A stretch of 64,000 bases of DNA from Botryllus schlosseri (Eukaryota), in assembly GCA_051294905.1 (NCBI GenBank), contig CM119383.1, positions 9,238,001 to 9,302,000 on the forward strand, in the 5' to 3' direction. The translations under genes and the position numbers were made by a program. This document shows, piece after piece, positions 1 to 64,000 of this stretch. Numbering within the stretch: the first letter of the stretch is position 1; every line of letters starts with the position of its first letter. The notes below the pieces were generated by a model, which did no database searches, was not told where the DNA came from, and saw only the letters and a list, made by a program, of their open reading frames with translations.

Positions 1-58
1 ACTTGTTATGGAACTGGAGAAGCCTGAGAGTATGATGCTTACGTGCCTTGACGAGTGA
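1..58 (+). CDS. CENPH: 3' end of the last exon of the upstream CENP-H-like copy (LVMELEKPESMMLTCLDE*)
   Basis: Identical to 49512-49569, including the TGA stop. Confidence 0.75.
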   Translation, partial: LVMELEKPESMMLTCLDE

Positions 59-1404
59 TAGAGCCATTCGTGATCACCAGTTGACGGCAATAGAGTGCCT
101 GGTAATCATCTGACCCGATTGGCAATCGAATATAAGTGCCGATATGAAGATGTCGTTCCATTTTATGAATTTGACGAGATGAAACTATACAAGATAAAGG
201 CAACATTGTTCATTTAGTTTGTTCATCTGCAACGGCCATAGTGTTGTCACTTATTGCTATGTCATTACTTTGTTGCTTGATAAAAAATGAACAAACTGCA
301 TATGAATGGAACACCATCGAGCAGAATTCTTCGAGTGCTGGATTGAAAAAGAATTTTGGTTCCTCCTTGGTGGACTTGCTTGAGCTGATGCAGCTGTAGT
401 TAGGGTGTTGACTGTCGGACGGAAACATTGTGTATTTATTAGTCGAATGATTGCTGCTATCTGAAATTATTGAACTATACTGGTAAATACATTTACATCC
501 TAGATTTTATTGCACTGATAGTGATTCATCAAACTGGCAAATACATTTCTGAGAGGCCTTTCCTGGAATATAATCTATGCAGAGATATGCAATGTGCAGG
601 GAAATTCTCGCTTGGTATCCTCGGGAAACACACGAGAAATCTTTGACAATGAATGGGATATACTATACACGCACGCAACTCCCCTCCCCCTTGCTGTAAT
701 TACATTATAAATCGGTAGTGTTCATTCATACTTCAATCATAAGTACTGACTACAATTGCAAACACGCGCCGAGTTGAAACTGAAATATTATTTATTTCTT
801 CATTGTCAGTAACAGAATCAGCATGACTGTATTTATTTCTTCATTGTCAGTAACAGAATCAGCATGACTGTATCATAAGGGTAGATTAATCATAAGTAAC
901 AGACGATGTTAGACAGCCAAACAAGATTGTTGACATCTCAAAAAATTAGAAGTGCTGGAAATAAAAGAGAATTGGAACTGATTACAAAAGATATCCACTA
1001 CAGGTCATTCACATACAGTCCACAGTTATTATTATTGATGACAGCTTGACTTAATAATTCCTCATTCTCATGAGGCAAGATCACATATCCAACAATAAAT
1101 GGTTTATAGGAAAAAAAAGGTAATTGCAATCCATCCCCACATAAAGTCACCACACGATAGTGTGGTAATTAAGTATGACAAAATACATGCGTGCAGTTTG
1201 AAAAGGCAACTTTCAAAGATAATATTTCACGGTTTGGTATAATGTCATGAGGTCGATAATGTAAACATGGTTGCAAACACGATTTGGTGTGAGAGGAAAG
1301 TTTGCCCGGCCCCGGTTAGCTAACAGGCTAGTCTTGTGTCTCCCGTTGGACAAGCACTTAAATTAGGACCCGAGTATTATTTCCCAGTCTGTCTTCCTTC
1401 ACGA

Positions 1405-4400
1405 TCATGATGCTTCCCCTCCGTTGAGCTGAGCGTTGACCAAGCTGTAGTAGGAGCCCTTCATTGCCAGCAAATCTTGATGCTTCCCGAATTCGACGAT
1501 AGTGCCGTTCTCCACGACGGCGATGTTGTCTGCGTTACGCACTGTGGACAGCCTGTGGGCTATAACGATGCAGGTACGGCCCTGCCTGGCGGCATCCAGC
1601 GCCTCTTGCACAATCTGTAAAGCAATTGTCATTGTAGAGGTATCCAGAGATGGTCAAGTACTCATCGTTGCTTCAGCAGCGTAAATTTCTACTACATACA
1701 GAAGTACTTAAGTCAAGGACATGTGAAAACTACTTAGGTAGAACAAAAAGTGAAGGTTTGAAAAGCAGTAACATAACCAATTTAGTAGCTATTTGAATTC
1801 TTCGAAAAGTAGATCTACTTCAGTGTACTGTACACATACAGTGATGGAGACATATCACAAAATTTGGTCTAAAAAGCATCACAAAATTTGGTCTAAAAAG
1901 CAAGTCGTTTTGCCTATGGGGAAACGGAAGCAGTCTGACATATAACCGCAAAAGTAAGTAGTACAGGTACGTAACACCACCAAATACTTTGTTACTGACA
2001 GCCCCTGCCAGTATCGCCAACTAAAATATCATTTGTACTCGACCTTTTCACTTTCCGTATCAAGCGCAGAAGTGGCCTCGTCGAGAAGCAAGACTTTGGG
2101 GTTGCGAAGCAAAGCTCGGGCGATTGCGACTCTCTGCTTTTGACCACCCGACAATTGCGTGCCCTTGTCGCCGACAGATGTTGCATAGCCCTGAAATGAA
2201 AAATATTGTTAGGACATGAGGAATCAGTATTACTATTTTAGGGTAAAAGAGAAAACAGCTGGTCTTGTAATGATGAGATTAATAAACTGGGTATTTGAAC
2301 GTAATGATGAGATTAATAAACTGGGTATTTGAACCTAATTTAAAACCAGACCAGGCAAAGATAAGATTTCATGCTATGCGAATCCCATACTCACATCAGG
2401 AAGGGTCTCGATGAAATTGTGGATATTCGCCGCTTTTGCGGCCTTCACGACCTCTTCCATAGAGGGTATGTAGGTGTTGTCGCCGTATCGAATATTGTCG
2501 GCGATGGACCGATCGAAAAGAACTGGTTCTTGCGAAACGATACCCAACTGTCGCCGCAACCACGCTATGTTCAAAGTCTTGCTGTCCACGTCGTCCAGGG
2601 TCTAAAGTTTTGAAGTATTCTCGGTTAGAAGCAACTCAAAGACAATGAAGATGGAATGTGCGGATGCTTGCTAACCATTTTGTTAGAACATGATGATACA
2701 TGAAGGGAAGTAGGATTGAGGATTAGAGACTTACAGTATCGATTTCTGTGACGAGTCAAACTACTACAGTTAATATGATGAAAATGTCTTCGAGTAGCTA
2801 AAAGAAATACTGTTGTCCAGGTATTTGAAAGTCAATCACAGTTACAAATGCACACGACTGCCATTTTCTCACAAATACGCCACTTCGATTAATGGAAAGG
2901 TCAATACCATGGCCATAACATCGGGAGATGTCCCTGATGATTACTGGTAAAGGCCAGAGGGGGTCAATAACCAAGTATTTCTACTTGCAGTATTCAAGTA
3001 GGTTTTGTATACTTGCACTAATTACTCAAATGGTTATGATTTCAGATAACTTCTACTTAAACTTTCAATTTTTTAGTCAAAACTAGGTCCAGAACACTTA
3101 CTTTTACATACTTTGAAATTGTTACTTCTACCGTTAATTGTACAGTGCAACTAAAAATATTAAGCACTTCTACTTGAGTACAAAAGATGACCTACTTTGA
3201 CCACCTCTGATAGAGGTAACACGTAAAGTGATACATACAACTTTGCCATCAGTCGGATCGTAGAATCTCTCAATAAGCTGAACGCATGTCGATTTCCCAC
3301 ATCCGGATTGGCCAACGAGGGCTATCGTCTGTCCCGGTTCCACAGTCACCGACAATCCCTTCAGAACCAAGATGTCTGGCCTGGTCGGGTACGTGAATTT
3401 CGCGTCGGTTATCGCCGTCTTTCCCCTCGATGACTCCTGTCGAAATATATATAATGATGGGTCCAGCCGACATCCGTCTCCATATAACTAACTGCGGTCA
3501 ATGATTACCTGCCTACTTACTGACATCATCAGTGCAATTTTTACCAGACGGTACCAGTATACAATACAGTTGGATTTTATGACTTTATGAGGACCATAGG
3601 CATTTCTGTTTTTGGTCCTAATGGTGAAAATGGATCTCCTTGATTACATTGACGCACGCGGCGTTCATCATGAATGGATGTGTTTAAATAGCATGTATTC
3701 TACAAATTACTGCCACTAGTTCTAAGTTCTAGTTGATATATGTCAGATTTTAATATCGGCTTTTATCGTCAAAATATTGATGCTGTTCTAGTCTCAACAA
3801 AACAATTCGTTACATACTTTGCACAATTATATCAGACTTTTCTGATAGTTTGAGGAAAAGCAAATCTATTTGGAGTGTCTGCCTTATCCGGGACAAAGAA
3901 CTCGAAGCAAAATTAAACAAACAAATTCAAACATGGTGTGCTGCAATAAAAAAGTAAAGCAACTGTCTCAGTAAAATGAGTTATGTATGAATGTATCTAT
4001 TTAGGCGGTGGTCTTGTGCCCACTTTCAAAATTTATGCTGATTCAATGTTGCTATGCAGAGGAACATTACCGAGCGAAATCCACAGGACTATACACTTCA
4101 TCTAATGTCCTGTCTGATAACAGCCATACTTCGGCCCACATTGCCTACAAGTTCTTACAGGTTGAGCGCCTTCTTGACTGTAAGCGTCAATCTCGGGCAC
4201 ACGGTCCAGCAACTTGAAAAGTCTGTTGGTGGAGATCTTCGCCTGGGCGTAATCCGGGGCGAACGAGCTTGTCTGTCCCACCGCAAAAGCTCCGAAAATG
4301 ACAGCCATCAAAACCCTAAAAAAATTTAGAATTATTTAAATGCTATACTCCTGCTTCCAAAGGCGGTCACTGACAAAGTACTTCTACTCTTTTTTTGGAG

Positions 4401-7400
4401 TACTCAAGCATATTTTGCGTACTTGTACATCAAAGATCAGCTTTTAAAGGCAAAACTAAGTGTACAATGCTCACTTTTTTACTTACTTTGAAACCTCTAC
4501 TCTAATCTTCACCGATCAACTGCTAAAAGTATGTAAACCCTTGATTAAATCCACTTTTCAAAACTACCCTCACTTGATAACTACCGTATTTATTTTCTAA
4601 TTTCAATTGAAGTAGCTTTGACAATTCTTGTAACTCGATACTTTTACTTGTAATTGAATAGAAATTTATGACTTCAATTCTATTACATGAAGACCTTCTT
4701 GGAGACATATAGTACAGGGTACAATTGAAAAGATATTCATATTGAATATTATTCAAAATTTCCAAGCCGGTGACATCATATTTTGTGATACGATTGTTGA
4801 TATAGGCCTAGAGTGTTCTCTATAATTCTCTACTAGCTGCTGATTATTACCCATGACGAGTGTCAGCCGAAAATATTCGGGTTTATCTCAATATGAATAT
4901 AACATGAGCACCAAGAATGGCTACTTTGATCACTTCTGGCTACAACATACAGTGTAGCAACTTACTTGTAAACATCCTCGTACGGCATGATATTCATTTC
5001 CACGAGGTAAGCGCCATATCTGAACGTGGCCGCGTACGCGAAGAACACGATCGACTGTGAGAATCCGAACGACACCCCGTAAAACAAAGCCTTTTGGATG
5101 GACTTGCTGTAAAGCAAAAGGCGGATTAGACTAACGTTTCAAAAACAAAACGAAGATAGCCACTCACGAGAACGGCAAGATCAGAGCGTCTTTGTACTTC
5201 TCAAACAAGTAATCTTCCTTAGTCAGCGAAGCGACTGTGCGAATATTCAACGTGGCTTCTGTCGCAATACTTCCGGCTTTTTCGTACGCCTTGGTCTCGT
5301 CACCAGACTGAAGAACATTTCATTTTTTATACTTTTACATCAACAGCTGGTCTGTCGACACATGAGCTTGCGACACTTCAGCATCATCATGCGGGTCAAA
5401 GTTTGGGTTAGCTTGTGGGAAATTACTCGGTCAAGTGTTGTTAGTGTTGTAGCTATTACTCTACATTTATGTTTGTCAAGCGACACAACCTACCTGGCCC
5501 GTCAGCAATTTCATCATGATAAATCCGGCGATAATCATAAACGGTACAAAAGCGAGGGTCACCAGAGTCAGCTGCCATCCGTAAGCGAACGCGATTCCGA
5601 GTGCAACACCTGAAAAGCACATATTCAATAATTTCTATTGAACCACAAGTATATGTAGCAATTTCAAAGATATGTCAAGCCGTCGTTGAGTACTACTCGA
5701 TTAGTTTCAAAAAGTGGGTTTTATCAAGGGCGCCGCATGCGTTTAGCGATGACTACGTTCAAAATTGCCAGTTGCATCTTTGTGGCTTACGCAAAATGAA
5801 TATTTTCGCGTCAAATGTGTGGAGTTTTAAAAAGATATTCACGAGGGGAGCATTTTGCCAGATTTCCACTCAAACTGCAAACTTGACAATAAACTACTTT
5901 CTACTTAAAAAATCTTCAGAGGTACACTGCAACTGTGAAGTGGTCTAAAATATATTGACTATACTGAGCAGTACCAGTCGGCAAAACCTACTTGAGTACT
6001 TTGAAAAAGGAGACACAAAAAACATTATGAGATCTCACCGAGAGCAAATATGTTCTGAATCATAACGCCGGCCCGCACTCCAGTGCACCCCTGCACTCGG
6101 GACGCGTCCGTGGCCAGCCTCGTCGTCAGAGCCCCGGTGCTGTTGCGGTGGTCGTCGAAGAATCCAATTTCCTGCCTCACCATCGCTTTGAAGCCGGCCG
6201 CACGCAGTCTCGAAGTCAATTCCTCACCGGATTTCGCGAAAGAAGAAGCCTACGACAAAGGAGACACAAAAGTAAAAAGGCAGCCAGCAGGAGGTAACAA
6301 GAACGATCGAGTGCTCTGAATTGAGCATTATTGCTAATGCTACGAGTCGAGCAGTGAGACTGGATTTTTTCAAGTAATGAAATGGTACGCTCCTTGGCAC
6401 TAAGAGTTTATTTATCAACGAGAATCATAGTTTCGGTTCTATTATCCACTGTGGAAAGCTGTTTAGGCGTATCACAGCGTACGAAACGTGCAGTACAAAG
6501 CTATGCGCATTGGTGGAAATGACATTTTTGTCAACCACAGCGCCGTCTTCATTCAACACTTCCCATACCCAGACCTCGCCAATCGATTTGTATCTACACT
6601 CTGACCCACGCACATTTCCAAGCCCTCCCCGAAATCCAACACAACCCACCTGAATCAAGTTCGCCAGAAAGGCCGCCCCGCCGATAGCGACAAACAGACA
6701 AGAGTACAGAACGATCTGATTCTCTCGTTCCGGGCCCGGGGGTTGTCCGAAAACTCCCAAAATCTCCGAGAACAAAATCGCAAAGCAAGGCTGTATCCCG
6801 CCGTTGATGGCAGCAGCGAAACATCCCACTGTAATGAAAGCATCTCAGTTTCAACCGAGGACCCCGCAGAGGTTAAGAATTGATTCCTTACTTATAATGA
6901 AAGGCAGTTCTGGTTTGTTCAAAGCAAGGACCCTCGAAAACGGCACTTCGGGCAGATCTTCATCTTCTTCTTCCACCTCCCCTTTGTCGCCGGACTTCAC
7001 GCTGGTTTCACTGACCAGACGCTTACGCTTGGTGCTGGAACGGCTTCTGATCGAGGACCGTTTCTGGTCTTCTAAAATGGCAAGAACTTTGTCTTCAACA
7101 GATCATCATCATCAGAGACCATGCAGTTGGACAAATATCCACGCGCTAAACTACATATCGCTATTAGATCAGTAGCAGAGGGTGTCAGAAATGATGTACT
7201 CCTACTTTTTCAGAGTATCAAAGTAGGTTTCGCCCACTTGCACTGTTACTACATCAAGTGATTGTGTTTTACACTACCAGATTAGTTGTAGAGTTTTCAG
7301 TTTTTCGGTAAAACTAAGCCTGCAATAAGCTACTTCTTTATTGATTTGTAAATTGCTACTTCTGGTTGTGCAAATGTAGAAATTTATTACAGTACTGCCT

Positions 7401-10400
7401 TGCTGGAGTACCAATAATGACTGCGTTCGCCACCTCCGATCAGTAGTAATGTGACAACAACGGTAAGAGTTTCAACGACACAATATACGAGGAGATTTAT
7501 CGAATAAAAAGAAATTACCAGCCAACATTGATATCACACACGGTTTCAAAAACAAATGACTAAATATCTCAACCCCGTACTCATCCAGGCTGTCAATCTC
7601 TCGCTTGGCCTAGGTGAGTGGTTCCCAACCTTTTTCGACTCATCGCCCCCTTATCAAGCTCGACACAAATTTTCGCCCCCCCCCCTTATTTACGGACCCG
7701 AAAAACAGGGAAACATAAACGGGAAATTTATACACTAAACCCTGATTGCCAAGGAATTGACTGAAAAAGAAAATTCATTATTTGGAGTAGGTGCCCGAAA
7801 AACCAATTTTCACGTCTACTTGACCTTTTTTAGTCAACTTTCGCACCATATGCAGGATAAGCCGTCTTCACATGCATTTTTTGACTGTGTTAGTTAAATA
7901 TATCTCACTGGAAGTTCTAACATTTGCGCCCCCCCCCCCCGGCGCCTCCCAATCGCCCCCTTGGGTATTTTCACCCCCTTGTTTCTAAAAATTGCCCACT
8001 GGGGGGAGACATCGCCCACGCTGGGAACCACTGGCCTAGGACAAGTATGGAGTTCTATTTGAACACTTTTTCGAGTTACAATGAAAAGTAGGTTGATGCT
8101 TTCCATTTCGTTTCTAAAGTAGAAAATAGTTTAGTGACAAATCTTACGGGTAATGCTCGCAAGTACCTGGTAACATGAGGGCACAATACCTCAAATATTT
8201 TGAAAACATTCAAGTCAGTGCTGTGCATGTTCAATTCGTACATTCACATTCTACACATTGGCGACCTTGATATCGTTAGAGTTCTAGGCCAAGCACAGTT
8301 TTCATTCTGTACAGTTTCACTTTCTCGTATCGAGCGAAACCATGAGATGAGTCTAACTGGCGCACATGCCTTTAGTTGTGAATACAATCAGGAAATAACG
8401 TGCACAAGGTAGAATCCAACATTTCCTCCTACAGAAATTGAATAAGGCGTCCTGAAAATAGAGCAAAAGCACCCCGCTCTCAATATGCATGTCAAAAGTT
8501 GATTGCTTCTCATACATTATTCAATCTGAAACGAGCGACTTGCAAGACATACATCGTATTGACAAAATTCCATTCGAGTCATCGTTGTGCCACCAGTATG
8601 TGTGAGGCCATTATTAATCTCTCACGCCCGTAGTTAAGTCATGGTTTTCTATAATTAACGAATTAGCTTCACAGGATATCCAATCACGCAAAGTACCTAG
8701 GGTTGGATAACAGAAAAAAGACGACACAATTCTCGAACACAATTATCTCACCAGCCTTCTTCAATTCTTCTTTCTCGTTGGTAGGACCTAAATAATGAGC
8801 ACGCGTTAATATTACGCCAGAGAGAAGCAACCAACGTGCCCGAGGGCATCCGAGCGTAATTCATAACAGAAACATTGCAGAAAAGCACCTTGGTCGCCGC
8901 CTCCGTAGCTCTGCATGTGGACCAGGTTTTGGTAGACTCCGTTTTCGACTTTGAGCAATTCGTTGTGGCTGCCTTGTTCCATCACCTGACCTTCGTTGAA
9001 TCCGATAATGACGTCAGAGTTGCGGATGGTCGACAGACGATGGGCGATGACAAGGGTGGTCCGACCTGTGGGCAAAAAAATCAAGATCAATGCGATACAT
9101 TAATGTAGCGTTTGATGCTACTTATCGCTCGGGTGGAAGTAACAATATGTTTTGTACGTCCCTTGCTGATTTTGATTATCGTTCTTTTATCAATGAGAAT
9201 AATTTTGTTTTGATACCTTACCTCTTTCCTATTATGGGACCATCAAAGCCTCATTCGTCTGTACGATATCTTTCAAAACATTTCGCTAAATACGACCCAT
9301 GTACCTGGTTACACAGACTTCGTGAAGTATTGTTCGATCTACTGTAATTTTTCAGAGCTACATGTCATGGTTGAGTTTGAAAATCTCATTTGCGCGAGTT
9401 AAACAGGTGTTATTCTCTTTCAGGTCACATAATACCAGGGTTGTAATGACTCGACGACCAAGATTTCGAGGAATAGTAAAGTAACCACACTATTGAGATT
9501 TTCTCTATTGGTACAGGTACTTAAAAACGCCACCAAAAACTGCTAAAAGTGAGGAAAATTGGTATATTATAAATGCGAACCATTCGATATAACAAAACAG
9601 AGTTACAAAAAGTGGGTTTAACAAGACTTTAACTGGTAACCGAGCAGTCAACACAATGACTTGGACTGGGACTCGAGTCATAAAACCATGACCTGGACTC
9701 GACGCTCTGCTCGATGACTTGGACTCGACTCGACTTAACTCGAGTCAAAACTATCATATTGAGATTGACTTGTGACTCAGAGCCTTGTGCTTTGGTTGCA
9801 ACCATGCATAACACGCACAATGAGTGGTTCTCAAATACTCGAGTCACTTGATTTTGCCCAGCCCAAATTTGAGGACAATATCGAAATTTCGAAGACATGT
9901 CAAAATCGCTACGAGTGGAAGGATCGAATTCAAATTCGTTCGAAGAAGTAGATTAAGACAAGCAGTTACGGTTTTCATTAGTGAATCGCCCCTTACAAAA
10001 TTGTAAGATGAAACTTGCAGTACGACTCAACTGGTGGTTGAATTAGGCGCAATTTCCAAAGTACCTCCCACCACGACTCCCCTGGTACAGAGATCTATGT
10101 CGATGAATTTTTTGAGGCAATCCAAAACCAAATTTTTACTGACAAAACCCACAACTAGAGCAAATAGTTCAAGTAGGGAAAACTACTTAGCGACTGACCG
10201 CCTCTGCGGTCGACGACGGTTGCCGGTAATTCTGTTTTGATACGGCTGTAGCACATATTCATCTTTATTATGGTTCAGAGTTAGGTCACGATGACACAAT
10301 CATCAGTCATAATCTTTTACATCTCGGCATTTCAGTTACAAAAACCAACCACTCTCACCTTGCGATGCTTTTTCTAGAGCCGCCTGCACAACAGATTCGC

Positions 10401-13400
10401 TCTCCGTGTCCAAAGCGGACGTGGCTTCATCTAGCAGCATCACTTTCGGGTTTCGGACAATGGCCCGCGCGATCGCAATCCTTTGTTTCTGCCCGCCGCT
10501 CATTTGCGCGCCACCTTCGCCCACCATTGTTTCGAATTTCTATTCGCAATAACGTTGCTTGTGATGTCATTGTATTGTAAAAGGATGTTTATGTATCTCA
10601 CATTTGGTAGTCTCATAATGAAGTCATAGGCGTTTGCTTGTCGCGCGGCCTCCTCTACTTCCTGGTCGGAAACACCGTCCCTGCCATATTTGATGTTTTC
10701 GCGGATTGTGGTGTCGAATAAAATGGGTTCCTGCGACACGACGCCGATGTTTTCGCGAAGCCATTTGACGTTGAGACTTCTCAAGTCGTGACCGTCGAAT
10801 TCAATCACACCGCTCTGAAAGACGAAGATAATGCATACATGAATTCATTCGTTTCGTTAATATATTCATTATTTCAAAATATCACAAGTTCGTGATAAAA
10901 TTAAAAGATAGGTAGAAGCCAAAGCTACTTAGTATTCCAGACGCCCCAGAACAGTGGTTCTCGAACTTTTTGTCTGGTAACTGTAGGCTGACGATAATTC
11001 CTAATATGCTGATTTCGTTAAGTTTAAGACATCATATAATGTGAAATTGGGAAGACTTGTATTTTAGAGTGGATTCACTCAATATTTCTGCTGCTGCATG
11101 TCATAAGCAAATCTTGAAATACGTGGCACTGGACTATACGTCTCGTTACCTTAGTTTGATCATAATATTGAGCTATGCTAGTTACACTGCTCCAAAATCT
11201 TTATTACTGATAATGGAGGTAATTACTTACAATTAATTACAATTGTCACTTAATATGAGATGATAATATAGCCTATTGAAGCAGCATTCAAGTTCTGGCA
11301 ATCTGTTTATCAATGATGTCTTGACTGGATCAGGTGGTAAAGTGTAGGACTACACAACCCGGATGTTAACAATAAAATAAAAAAGACATGGTTTCCTGCA
11401 GTCTTTATGTCATGCAGTAGCTAGTCTACATTTGCAGCAAATTGCAACGCGGCGAGCGTGAGGTAAATACCATCTGCTCGTTCATTCGTAAACGTATCGT
11501 TTTTTTTCTCAGGTGCGTCACATAAAACCCCCGAAAAAACACTGCAGATATGCACGATTAGCGGTCTTTGGAATGAATTTCACACATTTTCATCTCAATC
11601 CATCTAATAAATCTACGTTAGACTTGCTTGGTTGCAAGCGAAGAATTTTAAGCAAGCTTTTCATCACACTGACTCGGCAGCGTAATAGATCCGGGTGAAA
11701 AAAATGAGACGTCAGAAAATGAGAAAATCTCTACTATCTACCAAGTAATGTTATGTAACAAACGTTTGACCTCCATCTTAGGAACTTAGACAAACATTGA
11801 TCACAATACAGTGCGGTTATTACCTTACCACGTATCGTGACACAAAATCCTATTCAAATACACGAGAGATACGCACAGTCACCAACTCATTTCGCAATGC
11901 TGACCTTTGACATACATAACATAATGGCGACCTTTGACATACATACCGGCTTGCCGAGTATGCGCACATTGCAGTAACATGAGTCAAATCCGCTTGTTAT
12001 GAAACTTATTGACACAGTACTATGAATAGGTGGTAAAGATGCTGTTTAAATAGAGCAGGCCTATCTTTGATGTTGACCAGCTTGAATGACCATCTGTAAT
12101 ATTGCATGGTTTACAGTTTACTACTACACATATCCTGCAATCGGTGTGGAATATGGGTTAACCTATATCGATTACTTCATATCACAAAAACAATAGAATG
12201 ACATCAGCTGACAGATTACCTTAGTTTTTACAATAAGGTGAATGATTTACAGGATATATCCATCGAGATTATACTAGATCTTGGTGATCTGAAGTATTGG
12301 TAGATAGTGACTTGAGTCATAAAAATGAGAATGGCAAAGAATCGTCAGAAACAAAGTCCTTGTACTAATATTCTACTTAGCACTGAAGCAGGATATGCCT
12401 CTATTAGCACTGCTATGATAATTTAGCTCCAGAACCGATGCTTATACAATGGGGACAGATTTGGATCATTTTTATGAATGAAATCACCAATACAATAGAG
12501 ATATAACACTTTTGTCCTCCAATTACAAGCTGCACCTCTTGTAAAACTATAGCACTACCAGTACTACTAGTAATTTTGAAAGCTACATCGGAATAAACCC
12601 AATAGTTATGTGGATTACATCCATACATCTGTTTTCCAAGAAAAATTTCAAGTTACAATTCATTACAATAACATAATACCAAGTTTTGAGCACAACCACA
12701 ATCAAGCTAGGCAAGATGAATGATAAATTACACAGCACAAGCAGGTGTGGTAAAATGCTCAAGATATATAGTAAGCATACCTGTGGATCGTAAAATCTTT
12801 GAATAAGTTGAACACATGTACTCTTTCCACAACCGCTTTGGCCACACAAGGCCACCGTTTTCCCTACTTCCGCTGCGAAAGACACGCTCTTCAGCACCTT
12901 TGGAAACGTTGCGAACATGAAATCTGTGACCGTTGAAATAATCACTATAACCGAATGCTTCGGTAATATACCTGGACGTCAGGCCGAGACGGATAAGTGA
13001 AGTTAATGCTCTTGAATTCAATGCGTCCGTTGACTTTTTGGGGCTTGTGCCCTTCAGTCGAGAGGGAATCAATAGGGGGCTCCCGATCTATGATTTGAAA
13101 GATTTTCGCAGCCGCTGCCGAAGCGTTGGAGAAATATTCCATGTTGCTTCCAGACTGAAACAAGTGAAACATGAAAGAAACCTGAATAATCCTTGTTTAC
13201 GAGCAAGACTTCATATCGCTCTTGATAATTCCCCCTAATTTCAACAGAGTCACGTTATCACAAATATCTCATCAACCTGGACTTAATTAAAATATATACC
13301 GTACCATATTCGATGTATTGCATATGCAAGTCGGGACTGTACATCAGAGCATGCATTCGTCTGGCTGCAAGGCTGTTGACAGCACGCAGTTTTCAAGTTG

Positions 13401-16400
13401 AATATAATATCTACAAACCCCAGTTGGATACAGATACAGTTCGTACTGGGTGATAATAGCAACAGTCTTGCAATGACTTATCACATTTCAGAGGGAAAAA
13501 GGACTGGGCACAAGAAAACTTTTGCATGGATTACAAGCAGCATTTCATCACAGGTAAAATAAGGAATCATCAAGTCAGCACTGAATCATGACATGGTAAA
13601 CTGACAAAATGTAGAGACTTCTTCTTCAGCATGATCTGACTGATCAATCTTCAAGTAATCAATCATTTTTTGATATAATATATAGCCTACAAGACAATGT
13701 TTAAGGATATGGACACCTGTAAAGGTCATTTGCCAACATCAAACACTTCTAAAGTCATTGATTAGCAGGTCTTTAATGAAAACGTAAGTGTTCCAATGCA
13801 TACTTGTCCCAAAGCAAATGCTCCGATTAGAACACCGAAGAAACAAGTCAGCATGTTTCCCACCGAGAGCTCCCCAGAGAACACCAGTTCACTGCCATAC
13901 CAAAAAGCAAGTCCGTATGTGCTGAAGAGGATGAACATAACGGCACCGATGCCCGATCCCGATATGACGCCCTTTCTAATGCCCGTCTCTCTGGCCGGTA
14001 TCAGATTCTCATTGTATCTGGGAAGTTGACGCCGTTGGTACGTGAATTTTTAGGAGCACCACAATTATTAACGGACTCGAATTGAAAGCTCCCGTATGAT
14101 TGGAAAATTAATCAGTTTGAAATTACCAAATACCAAATTATTGCATTTAGGTTTTGTATTCTGTTTCCTATCGACCATAGCGGTCAATTTTGAGAGATAT
14201 TTCACATCAGCAGAAAGAGAGAATTGTTTGTGAAATTGCCATTGCAACACTGGTTGATCAACCATGATCGATAATTAGGTTGAAGGAATCAATGGTGACG
14301 CATAAGACAGCCTATCTTTACATATTACTTATTGACATAAAGTTTATAGAATTGTTACATTTGTACTCTCAACTCAATGCCATGATATCCAATTTTAGAA
14401 TGAACCAACCTTTAAAATTCTCAGTGACATCATAATATACGTTGCTTGTCAATGATTTACTATCACGATTTCATGCCCTTACCATTGATGATGTAGGAGG
14501 TTAGTTCAACAACAGCTATTTGCACTAACGCTTTGGTGCCACAAGTCATTGTAAAATAGGACTACACAAAGAGTGTCCGTAGCTAGGATACCGGTAGCAT
14601 AAACCCATTATAGAATAATACTTGAAAGTAGATTGAACTGTGCCCATACTAATCTAACATATGTGAAATCAATTAACAAAGTGACCGTTTACATGTAAAT
14701 GACAGTGAACAATCCAAGTGGTACAAAATCAATTCATTGGCATGAAATTACATTGAAATTGTGTATAGAATGCATTCTGTACACAGCTGATCCAATATGC
14801 GTGTAATTACTGCAGTAATTAAGAACGAGGTCACAGCTTCAGAAATACAGCAAGATTAATTTACCTGTCCCAAAGAGAAGGCGCCAATTAGGACGCCAAA
14901 GAACGCAGTGAGAAGATTGCCAATGGTTATTTCCTCGGCTAACACCAGTGTGGATCCGTACCAGAAAGCCAGGCCGTAAGTCCCAAACATAATCAGAAAG
15001 AGGAATCCCAGCGATGCTCCCGTAACCACCCCTTTCTTGATACCAAGGCCACGCGCACCGGACAGATTCGAGCTATACCTATACCATGCAGGATTAGAAA
15101 ACCGTAAATCATGCAACAAATCGAATTACCGTGGCGAGCAAACAGCTCATGACAATTTAAATGGCGGCAGAGTTGAAATCGAAGGCTTCGTTGTTTTGAC
15201 GACTTCCAATTAACAAACGGGGAACACCATTTGGCACATTGCAAGGGTCAAAAAGGCACTTGTCCTGGTTGAGGTTACAATAGATTCAATGTGGACATGT
15301 GGTAAGTTTTTTCAAGGTAAAGTGAACATTACTCGAAACTGCACATCACATACTGCTGGTACAATTCAAATTCACCAACTGCAAATATTCTTATTCGACG
15401 TAATCCTCACGTTCTCACCAGCACAAATCTCTCTCTAGTAAATATTGTGTGAAATTGATTTTCTTCACACATATCATAGGAATGTGAGCGCAAATGAAAG
15501 TCCATGGCGAAACCGAAATGATTCAACTCTGCAGTCCAGTCAATGCCAAAGTACAGTGATAATTGAGTCGCAATAAATTGGAACAAAATTAACAGCAATG
15601 TAAAATTATTGAACAACAAGTAAGCTGATGATTCAATCACAAAATCACCTTTCACATTCCTTCATCTCTCCACCAAAGGCCACAACCGTCCTTATGGAGG
15701 AAAGTACTTCCTCGGCCACGCCGCCGGCCTTGGCATACGCATCCAATTCCCTTTTCGTGAATGCCGTAGTGATCTGGAAATTGAAAATATCACGCTTGCA
15801 GGTGACAACCAATACACACGAGCAAGAAAACAAAATATACCTTGAACAACATGGCTGCCGATATCCCTAACAGCGGAGACACGGCCATGATAACCAAAGC
15901 TAATTTCCAACTGTACACAAATCCGATGACCAGACCAGCTAGGGCCCGCGCTACCATCTGTATTGAAATCGATACCTTATCGCTGATGCCATCTTGTATC
16001 TTTTGCACGTCGCTGTAAAGATGGGAAGACATAGAAACACACACATGCGCTAATTGCAGAATTCACTCACTCCGCAAGTCTCGTGTTCAATTCCCCGGAA
16101 GAGTTCAAATCAAAGAACCCGATATTTTGACGCAGAATGCTCCGGAAGAAACTTACCCTGATTTGACGCACTTGGCGGACGGCTTGCAGCATCCAACAGT
16201 AAACCTGGATCGTGACACGTTATACTTGAAATTTGAAACAAAAGAAAGATTCGAAACAAAAAACAGTTTCGATTGACACACCACAAAAGCTACTATGTAA
16301 CATGCATTCATGCAGCTGTCAAATCACTTGAACCATAATGGTCATGCAGGAAAATGCAGAATGTGGAAACTTTCGTTGAGAATTGTTCAGTGTTCAACGC

Positions 16401-19400
16401 TTCAGATCTCGTCCACCTTCACCATCGGCGTGAAGAAGATTTTCAAATACCAAACGTGACGAATCTCTACTTCAAAAATTATATTCCAAAGAACATGGTC
16501 ACAATCACCAATTACCGGTACATAATTTTTCATCGCATATTAAAATAAAGATACTGAAAAATCGTGGGCACACCAAACCATTAATATTGCAATTAAATAG
16601 TAGGCCTAATTCATTTTTAATTTGGTTCCCATCCATTATCATGACTCGCCTCGAAATACCATTTTGATTACACAAGTCAATTGCGATGAATGATGCCAGT
16701 ATGCCGTACTGCAACTATCCACTGGTTACACTGATTCTCACAATCACATCACAATGTTCAACCAAATTGAATCTATTGATGCTGCGATATTGAAAATGAG
16801 GAGAATTGATGGGTCAACATATTTTCTACAAATTATATACAATCATTTTTGAATTGTGAATTGCATTGTCAATTACAGTTTTGAAGATATCTTTATGGTT
16901 CTCGGCCCACCTGAGTGCTGGCGCACACTATAATAATCAGTGCCAGGTAAACATAGTACAGTGAGTATGTTGCCATTTCACTATTGAGGTCTGATTCACT
17001 CAGCATATCCGTGAAATTCCTGAAGTAAAGCAAAGATATTTAGAACAAGAAAAACATTAAGGCAAAAGGTATAGACAAGAAGGGTGAAGGCCAGGAAAAA
17101 ATAGGTGGAAGAAATGACCACAACAAAATGTTAGTATGCTACATGCTTGTAATAAGAACTCTGCGTATCATATACATTGGCTCTATCGCTTGCTATTTTG
17201 CAATGCCAAACCGTCTCGTAGATATACTGCAAAATTTGATAGTTGTGTACAGAATGTTGTAAGATAGTTACGATAACAATCACGTTTCAGGTACATATGA
17301 AAAAGCTGGTTACTGGGTTTTTTCAAGTAGATCTAATACAGGACGGCCTGCTCATTCGTAGATTTAGATGACAATTCTTTTCCATTAACTGTGTAAATAG
17401 ATACGAAGTAACTTACTTAACAATAAACGCATGCTATATTTATCCAACATATAGATAACTTTTAACCTGCTACGAAGAATTTCAAAGTTTTCCATTCAGT
17501 CTATATTAATTTCAAATTATCCCCACCCCAACAAGATCGATTTGCATTACAAAATTGTTAGGCTACCTACGAATTTTACTTGTCACTTGTGTTATAGTTT
17601 ATAAGCAAATAGCAGACATGCGAGAGTTGAACGCTTCACGTACAGTCATACACCCAAGGTGTATACAAGCAAAGAGATGTAATCTTAAAGATACCCAAGA
17701 AACGCCACAATCGGCATATACATGATACTTCAATGCATGCATGAGTTATCATTCGCGCAGCTCCCACTAAAGTATACCTGCACTGCCCCAGTTATCCACA
17801 CTGCTACCCCGATGATGGTAAAATATATTGCGAAATCGGACATATCATTAGTATATCCAGCAATTAAGGCATCTTTCCTTTGGTTAAATGCCCTGAACAA
17901 ATGTAATTCATATGTTCACGTAATTCAATGAGAGCTAATTCAACTAACACCCGTAGGCGCAGTGTGCCCATTTTTAAAACGTCATGATAGAAAATAGTGT
18001 TTACCACTCATCTGAAAACACCCAGAGTGGTGTCAGATACCAGTATACAACGGAGATAAAACAAATATCACCATCTACTGTCCTATATCTATTCTCCCGT
18101 GTGTAGAGATCGTGTTCGTAAAAATGGCTAATTTCCGGCCTATACTGTCATCTCACAAAATTGACGATTGCATATAAAACATCAAATCACATAGTATGGG
18201 GTATAGTATTGTTCTCAGCCAGAAAAAAGCGTTGAGAGTGGGTGAAAAAATTTAAAAATATGAATTTTCTACTCTTCAGAACTGTTCATTGTTCAACCAT
18301 CAACTTCAACATTTTCGTGGAATTTTCAGAACTACGATCTGGCTTTAAATCAGTGGTTCTCAAACTCATTTCGACACGCCCCCTCGATGATAGTGACAAA
18401 TTTCGCGCCCCCCTCATCGTCACATCAAAAAATATTTAAAAGACCAATAAGAATGTCTGCATGGAAGGCATGATGACTGTTAAGACACTTGTCAAATATG
18501 GAGTTTGGACCATGCACAGAAAAATAATTATGAGCTGCAGGCAAATTGCGCAACGCGCGGAAAATTTCCAGTTGTAAAATTTGTCAAACATAATCATGTG
18601 CATTGGTAGCACTTAGAACATGGATATTTTAGCAATTTTGGTGCCTAATTCCTCCTGTTAGCCCTTTGAGATTAGCTCAAACATACCTGACCATGAGCTA
18701 AATCAAACCCATGGCACAGATACACCCATTCACCAGTTCGGCTACAATTCCTTCAGGGACATCTTCTGATTAGTTCCAGGTTCGGTATCGGTCAAAATAT
18801 GGCATCAGTCTGTTATTGGTACGACGCAATTAGGATATTTAAAATCGAATTATAATCAGGATAATTGCTTTCACGCCACCAAGCGGGAGCTCGCCACCAA
18901 GGGGGAGCTCGCCCCCCCCCCCCCCCAGTTTGAGAACCACTGCTCTGTAAAGAACCTACATTCATTCAGAAATCTAGTTCCGCACCACAAATCATGATAA
19001 AATGATCACTTGAAAGAACTCACTGCTCGGTAGTGGTATTGGGAATGACGTTCATGTTGATACATTGCGTGTAGTTGAAATTACATTGTTGAAATGATCC
19101 ATAACCGACGAAACTGTCAGTCATATCGCCGAAGAAAATGAACATCACAGGCAGCGACGCACCATGAATGATGGCGCTGATTGTACCCACAAGTATCAAC
19201 AGGTAATCCTGCCCGGTTGCAAAGCGAAACTGAAAAACAAGATGGAGTTGTGGCAAAGTATGGGCTAGTCTACGGCTGCGCAAATGTGCTACAGTCTTCA
19301 TACAAATTTCTAACAGTGACCCAATCTCTACCGCAAACGCTGATGAGATATTTCCAGACATCTTTTTTGTAGGGTAGGCTACAATATGTTAGGATCTATA

Positions 19401-59700: not shown

Positions 59701-62700
59701 TTAATATTTTCATTACTCCAAAATATCACAAGATTGCGATAAAATGAAAAGATAGGAAGTGTACGACTACACAACCCGGGAGGTAACAATAAAATAAAAA
59801 GACATGGTTTCCTGAAATCTTCACGCCACGCAGCAGCTAGTCTACATTTGCGGCAAATTGCAATGCGAGGTAAATACCATCTGCTTGTTCATTCGTAAAC
59901 ACATCTTTTTTCTCAGGTGCATCACATGAAACAAAACAAAAAAACTTCAGATATGCACGAGTGGAAGTCTTAGGAACGAATTTAACACATTTTCATCTCA
60001 ATCCATCTAATAAATCTAAGTTAGACTTGCTTGGTTGCAAGCAAAGAATTTTAAGCAAGCTTTTCATCACACTAACTAGGCAGAGTAATAGATCCCGATT
60101 AAAAAAATGAGACGTCAGAAAATGAGAAAATCTCTACTATCCACCAAGTAATGTTATGTAACAAACGTTTGACCTCCGTCTTAGGAACTTAGACAAACAT
60201 TGATCACAATACATTGCGGTTATTACCTTACCACGTATCCGTGACACAAAATCCTATTCAAACACACGAGAGATACGCACAGTCACCAACTCATTTCGCA
60301 ATGCTGACCTTTGACATACATACCGGCTTACCGCGTATGCGCAGATTGCAGTAACATGAGTCAAATCCGCTTGTTATGAAACTTATTGACACAGTACTAT
60401 GAATAAGCGGTAAAGATGCTGTTTAAATAGAGCAGGCCTATCTTTGATGTTGACCAGCTTGAATGACCATCAGTTTATTGCATGGTTTACAGTTTACTAC
60501 TACACATATCCTGCAATCGGTGTGGGATACGGGTTAACCTATATCTATTACTTCATATCACAAAATACAATAGAACGACATCAGCTGACAGATTACCTTA
60601 GTTTTTACAATAAGGTGAATGATTTACAGGATATATCCATTGAGTTTATACTAGATCTTGACGATGTGAAGTATGGGTAGATAGTGACTTGAGTCATACA
60701 AACAAAAATGGCAAATAATCATCAGAAACAAAGTCCTTATACTAATATTCTACTTAGCACTGAAGCAGGATGCCTCTATTAGCACTGCTATGATAATTTA
60801 GCTCCAGAACCGATACTTATACAATGGGAACAGATTGGGATCATTTTTATGAATGAAATCACCAATACAATATAGATACAACACTTTTGTCCTCCAATTA
60901 CAAAGCTGCACCTCTTGTAAAACTATAGCGCTACCGGTAGGCTAATACTAGTAATTTTGAAAGCTACTTCGGAATAAACCCAATAGTTATGTGGATTACA
61001 TACAGATATCTCTTCTCATATAAACACTTCAAGTTACAATTCATAACAATAACATAATACCAAGTTTCGAGCACAGCCACAATAAAGCTATGTAAGATGA
61101 ACGATAAATTAATCAGCACAAGCATGTGTGGTAATATGCTCAAGATATATAGTACGCATACCTGTGGATCGTAAAATCTTTGGATCAGTTGAACACATGT
61201 ACTCTTCCCACAACCGCTTTGGCCACACAAGGCCACCGTTTTACCTACTTCCGCTGCGAAAGAGACGCTCTTCAGCACCTTTGGAAACGTTGCGAATATG
61301 AAATGTGTGCCTGTTGAAATCATCACTATAACCGAATGATTCGTTCATACCTGGACGTCAGGCCTGGACGGATATGTGAAGTTGATGCCCTTGAATTCAA
61401 TGCGCCCGTTCACTTTTTGGGGCTTGTGCCCTTCGGTCGAGAGCGAATCAATAGGGGGCTCCCGATCTATGATTTGAAATATTTTCGCAGCCGCTGCCGA
61501 AGCGTTGGAGAAATATTCCATGTTGCTTCCAGACTGAAATAAGCGAAAAATGAAAGAAACCCGAATAATCCTTGTTTACAAACAAGACTTCACATCGCTC
61601 TTGATAATTCATCCTAATTTCAACAGAGTGAGACATATATTAGTGTCACGTTACCAAAAATATCTCATCAACCTAGACTTAGTTGAAAAATATATCATAC
61701 TCGATGTATTTTATATTCAATTCGGGACCGTACATCAAAACAGCATGTAATCGTCTGGCTGCAAGGCTGTAGATGACAACACGCAATTTACAACTTAAAC
61801 AAAACATCTCCAAACCCCTGGATACAGTTAGTAGTTGGTAGGGATAGTAATAGAATAGTCTTGCAATAGTCTCCCATTTCAGAGAGAAAAAGCACTGGGC
61901 ACAACAAAACTTTTGCAAGGAATACAAGCAACATTTCATCACAGGTAGAATGACGAATCATCAAGTCAGCACTGAATCATGACATAGTAAACTGACACAA
62001 TGTTCTTCAGCAAGATCTCACCTACCAATCTTCAAGTAATCAATCATTTTTTGATATAATAATATACAAGACAATGTTTAGAATACGAACACCTGTAAAG
62101 GTCGTTTCCCAACATAAAACACTTCTAAAGTCATCGATTTGCAGGTGGTAAGTGAAAACGTAAGTGCTCTAATGCATACTTGTCCCAAAGCAAATGCTCC
62201 GATTAGAACACCGAAGAAACAAGTCAGCATGTTTCCCACCGAGAGCTCCCCAGAGAACACCAGTTCGCTGCCATACCAAAAAGCAAGTCCGTATGTACTG
62301 AAGAGGATGAACATGACGGCACCGATGCCCGATCCCGATATGACGCCCTTTCTAATGCCGGTCTCTCTGGCCGGTATCAGATTCTCATTGTATCTGGGAA
62401 GTTGACGCCGTTGGTATGTGAATTTTGAGAAGCACCCCAATTATTAACGGACTCGAATTGTAAGCTCCCGTACGATTGGAAAATGAATTAGTTTGAAATT
62501 ACCAAATTATCAATTACCAAAATTGCAGTTAGGTTTTGTATTTTGTTTCCTATCGATCATAGCGGTCAATTTTGAGAGATATTTCACATCAGCAGAAAGA
62601 GAGAATTGTTTGTGAAATTGCCATTACAACACTCGTTGATCAACCATGATCGATAATTAGGTTGAAAGAATCAATGGTGACGCATAAGACAGCCTATCTT

Positions 62701-63460
62701 TACATATTACTTATTGACATAAAGTTTATAGAATTGTTATATTTGTACTCACAACTCAATGCCATGATATCCAATTTTAGAATGAACCAACCTTTAAAAT
62801 TCTCAGTGACATCATAATATACGTTGCTTGTCAATGATTTACTATCACGATTTCATGCCCTTACCATTGATGATGTAGGAGGTTAGTTCAACAACAGCTA
62901 TTTGAACTAACCCTTTGGTGCCACAAGTCATTGTAAAATAGGACTACACAAAGAGTGTCCGTAGCTAGGATACCGGTAGCATAAACCCATTATAGAATAA
63001 TACTTGAAAGTAGATTGAACTGTGCCCATACTAATCTAACATATGTGAAATCAATTAACAAAGTGACCGTTTACATGTAAATGACAGTGAACAATCCAAG
63101 TGGTACAAAATCAATTCATTGGCATGAAATTACATTGAAATTGTGTATAGAATGCATTCTGTACACAGCTGATCCAATATGCGTGTAATTACTGCAGTAA
63201 TTAAGAACGAGGTCACAGCTTCAGAAATACAGCAAGATTAATTTACCTGTCCCAAAGAGAAGGCGCCAATTAGGACGCCAAAGAACGCAGTGAGAAGATT
63301 GCCAATGGTTATTTCCTTGGCTAACACCAGTGTGGATCCGTACCAGAAAGCCAGGCCGTAAGTCCCAAACATAATCAGAAAGAGGAATCCCAGCGATGCT
63401 CCCGTAACCACCCCTTTCTTGATACCAAGGCCACGCGCACCGGACAGATTCGAGCTATAC
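50767..63460 (-). CDS. ABCB1: Full-length ABCB/P-glycoprotein transporter, copy 2 (5' exons lie beyond the window end)
   Basis: Exons with the same lengths and GT-AG sites as copy 1: [63460-63247 OR 62393-62180], 61533-61351, 61278-61162, 59658-59446, 59383-59203, 58289-58113, 58011-57976, 56601-56422, 56358-56180, 55581-55371, 54926-54811, 54597-54458, 54396-54256, 53608-53452, 52745-52548, 51871-51665, 51520-51374, 50976-50767. No length change was found. Differences noticed are mostly synonymous, with a few replacements (E/K, P/A, Q/R, S/G, T/S). Confidence 0.93.
62180..62393 (-). CDS. ABCB1: ABCB copy 2 alternative TM5-TM6 exon B (214 nt)
   Basis: Near-identical to 13804-14017, with the same splice sites and an open frame. 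Confidence 0.9.
63247..63460 (-). CDS. ABCB1: ABCB copy 2 alternative TM5-TM6 exon A (214 nt)
   Basis: Near-identical to 14865-15078 (LAEEI becomes LAKEI), with the same splice sites. Confidence 0.9.
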
Positions 63461-64000
63461 CTATACCATGCAGGATTAGAAAACCGTAAATCATGCAACA
63501 AATCGAATTACCGTGGCGAGCAAACAGCTCATGACAATTTAAATGGCGGCAGAGTTGAAATCGAAGGCTTCGTTGTTTTGACGACTTCCAATTAACAAAC
63601 GGGGAACGCCATTTGGCACATTGCAAGGGTCAAAAAGGCACTTGTCCTGGTTGAGGTTACAATCGATTCAATGTGGACATGTGGTAAGGTTTTTTCAAGG
63701 TAAAGTGAACATTAATCGAAACTGCACATCACATACTGTTGGTACAATTCAAATTCACCAACTGCAAATAATCTTATTCGACGTAATCCTCACGTTCTCA
63801 CCAGCACAAATCTCTCTCTAGTAAATATTGTGTGAAATTGATTTTCTTCACACATATCATAGGAATGTGAGCGCAAATGAAAGTCCATGGCGAAACCGAA
63901 ATGATTCAACTCTGCAGTCCAGTCAATGCCAAAGTACAGTGATAATTGAGTCGCAACAAATTGGAACAAAATTAACAGCAATGTAAAATTATTGTACAAC

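What the first reader, a model, noticed from the sequence alone, without database searches (positions are those of the whole stretch)
13804..15078. Mutually exclusive TM5-TM6 exons in a P-glycoprotein: splice-switchable drug-binding pocket
Seen in sequence: the exon encoding TM5-ECL3-TM6 exists twice in tandem, A (14865-15078) and B (13804-14017). Both are exactly 214 nt, phase 2 to 0, open, and flanked by GT-AG. They share 43/71 residues (about 61%). Because 214 mod 3 = 1, including both or neither shifts the frame, which is the hallmark of mutually exclusive exons. Both exons are intact in gene copy 2 as well (63247-63460, 62180-62393). Established knowledge: TM5/TM6 line the substrate cavity of ABCB1, including human F303, I306, Y307 and Y310. 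By my manual alignment the differences cluster in TM5 (F303-equivalent F vs M, I306-equivalent M vs L, flanking FL vs AV) and in ECL3, while the YGLAFWYG and FFGVLIGAF cores are fixed. Inference: one locus can make transporters with different substrate ranges by splicing, and two gene copies would give four variants. Mutually exclusive exons are known for the Drosophila MRP (ABCC) gene; I do not recall a described case for ABCB1-type transporters, but I cannot check the literature.
Basis: partly seen in the sequence, partly recalled or inferred. Interest (0 to 1): 0.88.

Follow-up and report, generated by a model that had tools for sequence, protein, structure and literature searches.

The report
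Mutually exclusive exons in a P-glycoprotein
An ABCB1-type drug-efflux pump gene has two alternative versions of the exon for membrane helices 5 and 6; mRNAs carry one or the other, and a distant relative keeps both, so one gene makes two pumps that differ at known drug-contact positions.

Summary
Exon A (14865-15078) and exon B (13804-14017), on the minus strand, are each 214 nt with AG/GT borders and share 43 of 71 residues.

New evidence:
- **Splicing.** Assembled transcripts from two independent studies join the upstream exon to A and then to the downstream exon, or to B and then to the downstream exon. No A-to-B joint and no skip-both joint was seen. Both forms carry copy-1 letters, so this is splicing within one gene.
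- **Frame.** Including both exons gives a stop at codon 3 of B. Skipping both gives a stop after 22 codons.
- **Conservation.** A relative with saturated synonymous sites (locus L001) keeps the same A-then-B pair, with dN/dS 0.07 for A and 0.025 for B. The helix-5 core is invariant within each type. A third species (L008) also has a tandem pair.
- **Position in the protein.** The exon aligns without gaps to human ABCB1 residues 277-347. The versions differ at the F303 and I306 equivalents. The helix-6 pocket residues are identical.

Not shown: any difference in substrate range, tissue regulation, or expression of gene copy 2.

I found no described ABCB case in the searchable literature; the ABCC cases are known. 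It is a new member of a known kind. This scan also noted a candidate ABCC1 case in this genome, unchecked here.

The parts
1405..19361 (-). ABCB1-type full transporter gene, copy 1. This is the approximate extent seen: stop codon near 1405, N-terminal TM1 exon at 19020-19361, and the first exon(s) may lie further upstream.
   Evidence: tblastn of Hydra ABCB1 (P0013) gives a collinear TMD-NBD-TMD-NBD series of exon hits. ORF translations show Walker [10 protein letters not shown] twice and the signature [13 protein letters not shown]. A 4604-nt spliced contig in run X3 covers it.
15649..15773 (-). Constitutive upstream exon, ending ...KECE + AG (intron phase 2).
   Evidence: One search shows joints 15773>15841, 15649>15078 and 15649>14017.
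15085..15115 (-). Two TGCATG hexamers (15115-15110 and 15090-15085) lying 36 and 11 nt upstream of the exon A acceptor. They are candidate Rbfox-type regulatory sites (hypothesis only).
   Evidence: L001 has TGCATG 9 nt upstream of its exon A. The intron read-through of P0002 (..IMHDR|Y) implies the same.
14865..15078 (-). Exon A: 214 nt, TM5-ECL3-TM6 version A, equivalent to human ABCB1 277-347.
   Evidence: Spliced in without B in X3 contig 1 (depth 33.6) and X6 contig 5 (depth 7.4). The L001 orthologue is 80% identical with dN/dS 0.07.
14018..14864 (-). Intron of 847 nt between A and B. It is too long for steric exclusion, and both ends are GT-AG (U2-type).
   Evidence: No convincing or conserved docking/selector pairing was found.
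13804..14017 (-). Exon B: 214 nt, TM5-ECL3-TM6 version B. Its acceptor has a weak polypyrimidine tract.
   Evidence: Spliced in without A in X6 contig 4 (15649>14017 and 13804>13154, depth 9.0) and X3 contig 2 (15649>14017, depth 6.9). Held in full by several small RNA runs. The L001 orthologue is 90% identical with dN/dS 0.025.
12972..13154 (-). Constitutive downstream exon (SGSNMEYF...RPDVQ).
   Evidence: One search shows joints 14865>13154, 13804>13154 and the 74-nt intron 12898-12971.
63247..63460 (-). Exon A of gene copy 2. It differs from A1 by one base (E to K).
62180..62393 (-). Exon B of gene copy 2. It differs from B1 at four bases, all synonymous third-position changes.

Best explanation
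This is an old tandem duplication of the exon that encodes the cytoplasmic extension of TM5, TM5 itself, extracellular loop 3 and the outer half of TM6 of an ABCB1-type (P-glycoprotein-like) full transporter. The two copies are spliced in a mutually exclusive way.

Shown:
- mRNAs join the upstream exon (ending at 15649) either to A and then to 13154, or to B and then to 13154.
- Both forms come from the same gene copy.
- Both exons are under strong purifying selection, and the pair is kept in the same order in a species so distant that synonymous sites are saturated.

Follows from the sequence: each exon is 214 nt (3n+1). Including both gives a stop at the third codon of B. Including neither gives a stop 22 codons later. 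Only the A-only and B-only mRNAs encode a transporter. The other two forms would be targets of nonsense-mediated decay. That last step is inferred from general knowledge and was not tested.

Inferred: the two pumps differ in 28 of 71 residues. Eleven of these lie in TM5 (human 294-308) and include the equivalents of the drug-contact residues F303 (F in A, M in B) and I306 (M in A, L in B). The TM6 pocket residues (F336, L339, I340, F343, Q347 equivalents) are unchanged. The TM5 core is invariant within each exon type across species. I therefore think it most likely that A and B give transporters with different substrate or inhibitor profiles, or different transport kinetics, used in different proportions in different samples.

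How the choice is regulated is unknown. One lead is a pair of TGCATG motifs just upstream of A.
For: - **Splicing.** Run X3 contig 1 (4604 nt, depth 33.6) has joints 15649>15078 and 14865>13154. X3 contig 2 has 15649>14017 (depth 6.9). X6 contig 4 has 15649>14017 plus 13804>13154 (depth 9.0). X6 contig 5 has A with both flanks (depth 7.4). All skipped stretches have CT..AC ends, which is GT..AG on the gene strand. No 14865>14017 or 15649>13154 joint appears. X3 and X6 come from different studies.
- **Same gene copy.** The contigs have 0 other letters across B and A, although copy 2 differs at 4 sites in B and 1 site in A.
- **Frame.**
- **Selection between the gene copies.** B1 and B2 differ at 4 bases, all synonymous, while the flanking introns are 87-93% identical. 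The chance that 4 of 4 changes are synonymous under neutrality is about (51.7/213)^4 = 0.0035.
- **Conservation.** L001 has A at 4851-5063 and B at 6252-6464, both 214 nt with AG/GT borders. dN/dS is 0.07 for A and 0.025 for B, with dS above 2, and the introns cannot be aligned. A matches A at 80% and B matches B at 90%, against 58-62% between A and B, so the duplication predates that species split.
- **Type-specific TM5 core.** Exon positions 20-32 are identical between the window and L001 for each type.
- **Third species.** L008 has a tandem pair 178 nt apart.
- **Residue mapping.** Ungapped match to human and mouse ABCB1 structures, E = 1e-20 to 1e-23. The pocket residue list comes from PMC3857843.
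- **Variable use.** The A:B depth ratio is about 5:1 in X3 and about 0.8:1 in X6. Six RNA runs that hold the gene (X7, X8, X10, X12-14) are not among the holders of exon B.
Against: - The RNA evidence is from assembled contigs, not counted reads. Contigs drop rare forms, so A+B or skip-both mRNAs cannot be excluded.
- The B-to-downstream joint in X6 rests on a 30-letter side, and the X3 B joint on a 26-letter side. Both are just under the tool's 31-letter rule.
- The one raw-read run that covered the gene (X23) had only 28 reads, with a few on A and none on B. X34 had no reads.
- The run types are guessed ('RNA?'), although spliced contigs can hardly come from DNA.
- No functional data exist. 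The swapped positions cover all faces of TM5, the cytoplasmic extension and ECL3, so a change of pocket specificity is only one possible consequence.
- Sample identities are coded, so regulated use by tissue or stage is not shown.
- The exon tree is poorly resolved.
Confidence: 0.85

Rival explanations
1. The exons are truly mutually exclusive, but the two isoforms do not differ in which compounds they transport. The swap instead tunes something else: helix packing and stability, TMD-NBD coupling (the exon begins just after the second coupling helix), behaviour in a different membrane lipid environment, trafficking, or partner binding through ECL3.
For: Of the 28 differences, 7 lie in the cytoplasmic extension (human 278-290) and 7 around ECL3 (319-328). 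In TM5 nearly every position from 294 to 308 differs, not only the cavity-facing ones. All TM6 pocket residues are identical.
Against: The equivalents of F303 and I306, which the literature lists among drug-pocket residues (PMC3857843), do differ. Each state is fixed within its exon type across a very deep divergence.
Confidence: 0.3
2. There is no alternative splicing within one gene. The two tandem gene copies have divided the work, one always using A and the other always using B.
For: The gene is duplicated in tandem at 90-94% identity, and both copies keep both exons.
Against: The A-containing and B-containing contigs both match copy 1 exactly at the sites where the copies differ (4 sites in B, 1 in A). 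L001 and L008 show the pair within a single gene.
Confidence: 0.03
3. One of the two exons is a decaying relic, and its appearance in mRNA is splicing noise.
For: Exon B has a weak polypyrimidine tract and is the minor form in X3.
Against: Both reading frames remain open at 57% nucleotide identity with no indel. dN/dS is 0.025-0.07 against a relative with saturated dS, and B is the better conserved of the two. In X6 the depth of B is equal to or above that of A.
Confidence: 0.02

Closest known systems
Drosophila MRP (dMRP, ABCC) and C. elegans mrp-1 exon 13A-D mutually exclusive exons
   Same: These are tandem-duplicated homologous exons inside a transmembrane domain of a multidrug-type ABC transporter, with one chosen per mRNA. 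C. elegans mrp-1 has four 156-nt exons (PMC4165533). The mrp and mrp-1 events are mapped in PMC9741552.
   Different: They belong to a different subfamily (ABCC, not ABCB) and affect different helices. The mrp-1 exons are 3n in length, so the frame does not enforce exclusion. Here the exons are 3n+1. Competing RNA structures are reported for such genes (Yue et al. 2017, as cited in PMC9741552). None could be shown here.
Human and mouse ABCB1 (P-glycoprotein), residues 277-347
   Same: The exon aligns without gaps (39/71 identical for A, 37/71 for B). The architecture is the same, and the pocket residues Y310, F336, L339, I340, F343 and Q347 are conserved.
   Different: As far as I know (from memory, not tested here), the vertebrate gene has one version of this segment. 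Here there are two, differing at the 303, 304 and 306 equivalents among others. Y307 is F in both versions.
Human ABCC9 (SUR2A/SUR2B) alternative homologous exons
   Same: It is an ABC protein with a tandem-duplicated exon substitution that gives isoforms with different pharmacology (named in PMC9741552; the pharmacology is from my own knowledge).
   Different: That event swaps the C-terminal exon of a channel regulator, not a membrane helix pair of a pump.
Mutually exclusive exons of voltage-gated Na+ and Ca2+ channels (for example SCN exon 5a/5b)
   Same: They are ancient, conserved exon pairs of equal length that swap a membrane segment and fine-tune function (PMC9741552; PMC12772994 abstract).
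   Different: They belong to an unrelated protein family. They are an analogy of principle only.

Membership tests
ABCB full transporter (P-glycoprotein / ABCB1-like) | TMD-NBD-TMD-NBD architecture in one polypeptide | tested here: met
   Exon hits are collinear with Hydra ABCB1 (P0013) over residues 107-1258, covering both halves. The N-terminal TM1 exon appears in the ORF list.
ABCB full transporter (P-glycoprotein / ABCB1-like) | Closest solved relatives are ABCB1 rather than other ABC subfamilies | tested here: met
   For both exons the top hits are mouse and human ABCB1 (E = 1e-20 to 1e-23), then ABCB4, C. elegans P-gp and BSEP.
ABCB full transporter (P-glycoprotein / ABCB1-like) | Walker A and ABC signature motifs in the NBDs | tested here: met
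   GQSGCGKST is seen in the ORFs at 12583-12945 and 3170-3370, and [13 protein letters not shown] at 10336-10527. The second signature region is 78% identical to P0013.
ABCB full transporter (P-glycoprotein / ABCB1-like) | ATP-driven efflux of xenobiotics | not testable with these tools
   This needs expression and transport assays.
Mutually exclusive exons from tandem exon duplication | Adjacent homologous exons of the same length and phase, each with its own splice sites | tested here: met
Mutually exclusive exons from tandem exon duplication | Mature mRNAs contain exactly one of the exons | tested here: met
   A-only and B-only contigs are present in two studies, with no A-B or skip-both joint. 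Caveat: contigs show presence, not absence, and read-level counts were too low (X23).
Mutually exclusive exons from tandem exon duplication | Both exons kept by purifying selection in other species | tested here: met
   L001 gives dN/dS 0.07 for A and 0.025 for B. L008 has a tandem pair.
Mutually exclusive splicing by competing RNA structures (docking and selector sites) | Conserved intronic complementary elements, one per variable exon, pairing with one docking site | tested here: inconclusive
   Only short AT-rich inverted matches of 12-15 nt were found, at about chance level. None is shared with L001 or L008. The introns of the relatives cannot be aligned.
Mutually exclusive splicing by steric hindrance or U2/U12 incompatibility | A very short intron between the exons, or one U12-type intron | tested here: not met
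   The intron between the exons is 847 nt here, about 1190 nt in L001 and 178 nt in L008. All borders are GT-AG without a U12-type donor.

The most novel reading that the evidence does not exclude
The A/B choice is a regulated, cell-type-specific switch, possibly repressing A through the conserved UGCAUG sites in Rbfox-expressing cells. It would give one P-glycoprotein gene two evolutionarily tuned drug pockets, kept apart by selection since before the split of the species compared here. That would be a natural pair of specificity variants of P-gp differing mainly in TM5.
Probability: 0.35. Interest if true: 0.75.

Novelty: new member of a known kind. Interest (0 to 1): 0.55.

Why it matters
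P-glycoprotein's ability to bind very many unrelated compounds is usually studied with artificial mutants. Here evolution has kept two alternative versions of TM5 within one gene, in at least two distantly related species. The versions include two known drug-contact positions, and the rest of the pump is identical.

Expressing the two isoforms would give a clean natural experiment on how TM5 shapes substrate range or kinetics. For the biology of the animal, it means chemical-defence capacity can be changed by splicing rather than by gene number. Expression studies or knock-outs that ignore the exon choice would miss this.

It also extends tandem-exon switching in ABC pumps from the ABCC branch to the ABCB branch.

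Tried and rejected
- **Identifying the organism failed.** The nearest full-length named proteins are only 45-53% identical (sturgeon, frog, salmon, Saccoglossus, Hydra). The atlas search gave only generic ABC_membrane clusters. Word searches of earlier notes gave nothing useful. Exon-length protein searches returned unnamed fragments from Logan and ENA marine samples.
- **Exon tree.** A tree of 26 TM5-TM6 exon sequences was too poorly resolved to date the duplication. I rely on the pairwise pattern instead: A to A 80%, B to B 90%, A to B about 60%.
- **Docking/selector RNA pairing.** Nothing beyond chance was found.
- **Hydra ABCB1 isoforms X2 and X4.** Their 69 differences are scattered, so they are not an exon swap. 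The Hydra locus was not on record.
- **Other loci.** L002, L004, L005 and L006/L007 carry a single exon within +/-10 kb, or within the whole contig for the shorter L006 and L007. They are other paralogues or lineages without the pair, of unknown taxon. L003, L009, L010 and L011 are too short to tell.
- **Raw-read runs.** X34 gave no reads. X23 gave 28 reads, too few for junction counts.
- **Low A1/A2 divergence as a sign of selection: rejected.** The whole stretch 15617-14180, introns included, is about 99.5% identical between the copies, which indicates a recent conversion tract.

Full report
**Observation**

The gene lies on the minus strand. Reading 15800 to 13000 shows an upstream exon that ends ...GAATGTGAAAG|GT at 15649. 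Two 214-nt segments follow, at 15078-14865 (A) and 14017-13804 (B). Each is preceded by AG and followed by GT. A downstream exon starts at 13154.

With the first base completing the split Arg codon, both segments give 71 open codons. They share 43/71 residues and 57% of nucleotides. The other frames of both contain stops. No third copy exists in the window.

The second gene copy, near the end of the window, carries both exons intact.

**What the gene is**

A named Hydra ABCB1 protein (P0013) aligns collinearly to exon-sized pieces from about 16200 down to 1426. Both transmembrane and both nucleotide-binding halves are present, and the Walker A and signature motifs appear in the ORF list.

Each exon version matches mouse and human ABCB1 structures best (E = 1e-20 to 1e-23). 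ABCB4, C. elegans P-gp and BSEP follow. It is therefore an ABCB1-like full transporter.

I could not identify the organism. The closest named full-length proteins are only about 45-53% identical.

**Are the exons used, and exclusively?**

Public runs of the same organism were found with the stretch and with exon B alone. Several small RNA-type runs hold all of B while holding only about a quarter of the 2.9-kb stretch. That is what spliced mRNA with both exon forms would give.

Laying four runs on 12500-16300 gave these contigs:

| Run | Contig | Joints or content | Depth |
|---|---|---|---|
| X3 | 1 (4604 nt) | 15649>15078 and 14865>13154 (A only) | 33.6 |
| X3 | 2 | upstream exon joined directly to B (15649>14017) | 6.9 |
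| X6 | 4 | 15649>14017 and 13804>13154 (B only) | 9.0 |
| X6 | 5 | A with both flanks | 7.4 |

X3 and X6 come from different studies. All skipped stretches end CT..AC on the plus strand, which is GT..AG on the gene strand. No A-to-B joint and no skip-both joint was reported.

Caveats:
- These are assembler contigs, which can miss rare forms.
- Two of the B joints have 26 and 30 letters on the shorter side.
- The raw-read run X23 had only 28 reads (a few on A, none on B), and X34 had none.

**One gene or two?**

The window holds a tandem duplication: 1-15617 matches 49512-64000 at 90-94% identity. B1 and B2 differ at four bases and A1 and A2 at one. The A and B contigs carry no other letters across the exons, so both isoforms come from copy 1. 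The idea that each gene copy uses one exon is rejected. Expression of copy 2 was not seen.

**Why only one exon per mRNA**

214 = 3n+1. With both exons included, B is read in a frame that stops at its third codon. With neither, a stop follows after 22 codons. Only A-only and B-only mRNAs encode a pump. That the other forms are removed by nonsense-mediated decay is inferred.

Other mechanisms:
- Steric exclusion is unlikely, because the intron between the exons is 847 nt.
- U12/U2 incompatibility is unlikely, because all borders are GT-AG.
- A search for docking/selector RNA pairing found only short matches at chance level, none shared with relatives. This remains inconclusive.
- One lead for regulation: two TGCATG hexamers lie 36 and 11 nt upstream of A. 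One lies 9 nt upstream of A in L001, and a third species shows the same by its read-through peptide. By general knowledge this is the Rbfox motif, and a position upstream of an exon usually represses that exon. This is untested.

**Conservation**

A profile of the exon found ORF fragments in other assemblies.

- **L001.** This 15-kb contig carries a collinear orthologous gene with an A-type exon (4851-5063, 80% identical) followed by a B-type exon (6252-6464, 90% identical). Both are 214 nt with AG/GT borders. Synonymous sites are saturated (dS above 2) and the introns do not align. dN/dS is 0.07 for A and 0.025 for B.
- **Age.** A matches A and B matches B far better than A matches B (58-62%). 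The duplication is therefore older than that species split, and both exons have been kept under selection since.
- **Between the two gene copies.** All four B differences are synonymous (p about 0.0035 under neutrality). The near-identity of A between copies is not evidence of selection. It lies in a 1.4-kb stretch that is about 99.5% identical, introns included, which indicates a conversion tract.
- **L008.** A third species has a tandem pair only 178 nt apart, with the downstream exon clearly B-like (73%).
- **P0152.** Another B-type fragment, 87% identical, comes from a further sample.
- **Loci with one exon.** Several other loci have a single exon.
- **Tree.** The exon tree is too weak to say more.

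**What changes in the protein**

The exon aligns without gaps to human ABCB1 residues 277-347. The 28 differences fall as follows:

| Region | Human residues | Differences |
|---|---|---|
| Cytoplasmic extension of TM5 | 278-290 | 7 |
| TM5 | 294-308 | 11 |
| ECL3 and nearby | 319-328 | 7 |
| TM6 | 331, 334, 344 | 3 |

- PMC3857843 lists F303, I306, Y307, F336, L339, I340, F343 and Q347 among the pocket residues.
- Of these, the 303 equivalent (F in A, M in B) and the 306 equivalent (M in A, L in B) differ.
- The 307 equivalent is F in both versions, and the TM6 residues are identical.
- The TM5 core (exon positions 20-32) is identical between the window and L001 within each type and different between types. 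That is the pattern expected if each version has its own function.
- Because nearly all faces of TM5 are swapped, a change in packing, coupling or lipid interface is a serious alternative to a change in substrate range.

**Use in different samples**

The depth ratio A:B is about 5:1 in X3 and about 0.8:1 in X6. Six RNA-type runs that hold the gene are not among the holders of exon B. This suggests variable use. The samples are coded and contig depths are crude, so regulation is not shown.

**Comparison with what is known**

Mutually exclusive tandem exons in ABC pumps are described for the ABCC branch:
- C. elegans mrp-1 exons 13A-D (PMC4165533).
- Drosophila mrp and human ABCC9 (PMC9741552).

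Four full-text searches found no described case in an ABCB/P-glycoprotein gene. This covers only the open library. I could not check whether the genome's own annotation already lists both isoforms.

**Verdict**

The mutually exclusive splicing is supported by transcripts, frame logic and deep conservation. The functional reading (two substrate ranges) is plausible but untested. It is a new member of a known kind, of moderate to good interest.

Noticed in passing
window 1-15617 and 49512-64000: The ABCB1-like gene is tandemly duplicated in direct orientation, about 48.4 kb apart, at 90-94% identity including introns. Copy 2 runs off the end of the window. I could not decide whether it is a true paralogue or a mis-placed haplotype. 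No copy-2 letters were seen in the transcripts laid.
   Followed up: partly
window 14180-15617 versus 62560-64000 (approximate): A stretch of about 1.4 kb (the intron upstream of A, exon A and most of the A-B intron) is about 99.5% identical between the two copies. The sequence just downstream drops to 65-93%. This looks like a recent gene-conversion tract.
   Followed up: partly
window 15085-15115 (minus strand); L001 4840-4845: TGCATG hexamers lie directly upstream of the exon A acceptor in the window (two) and in L001 (one). None lies next to exon B. This is a possible Rbfox-type splicing control site.
   Followed up: partly
window 39511-40034: This stretch matches its own reverse complement at 93.6% over 528 bases, so it is a large palindrome or hairpin-forming repeat.
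   Followed up: no
window 33161-34018 and 45877-47663: An inverted pair of similar segments (80-85% identical, about 400-470 bases each) lies between the two ABCB1 copies. It is probably a repeat element.
   Followed up: no
window 14278-14404: The raw-read RNA run X23 shows a little depth (about 1.3) inside the A-B intron, where the contig runs have none. It could be a repeat, pre-mRNA or a small intronic transcript.
   Followed up: no
L008 1020-1232 and 1411-1623: A short-intron species (Logan SRR25569774) has the same tandem exon pair, only 178 nt apart. It would be a compact natural minigene for studying how the exon is chosen.
   Followed up: partly
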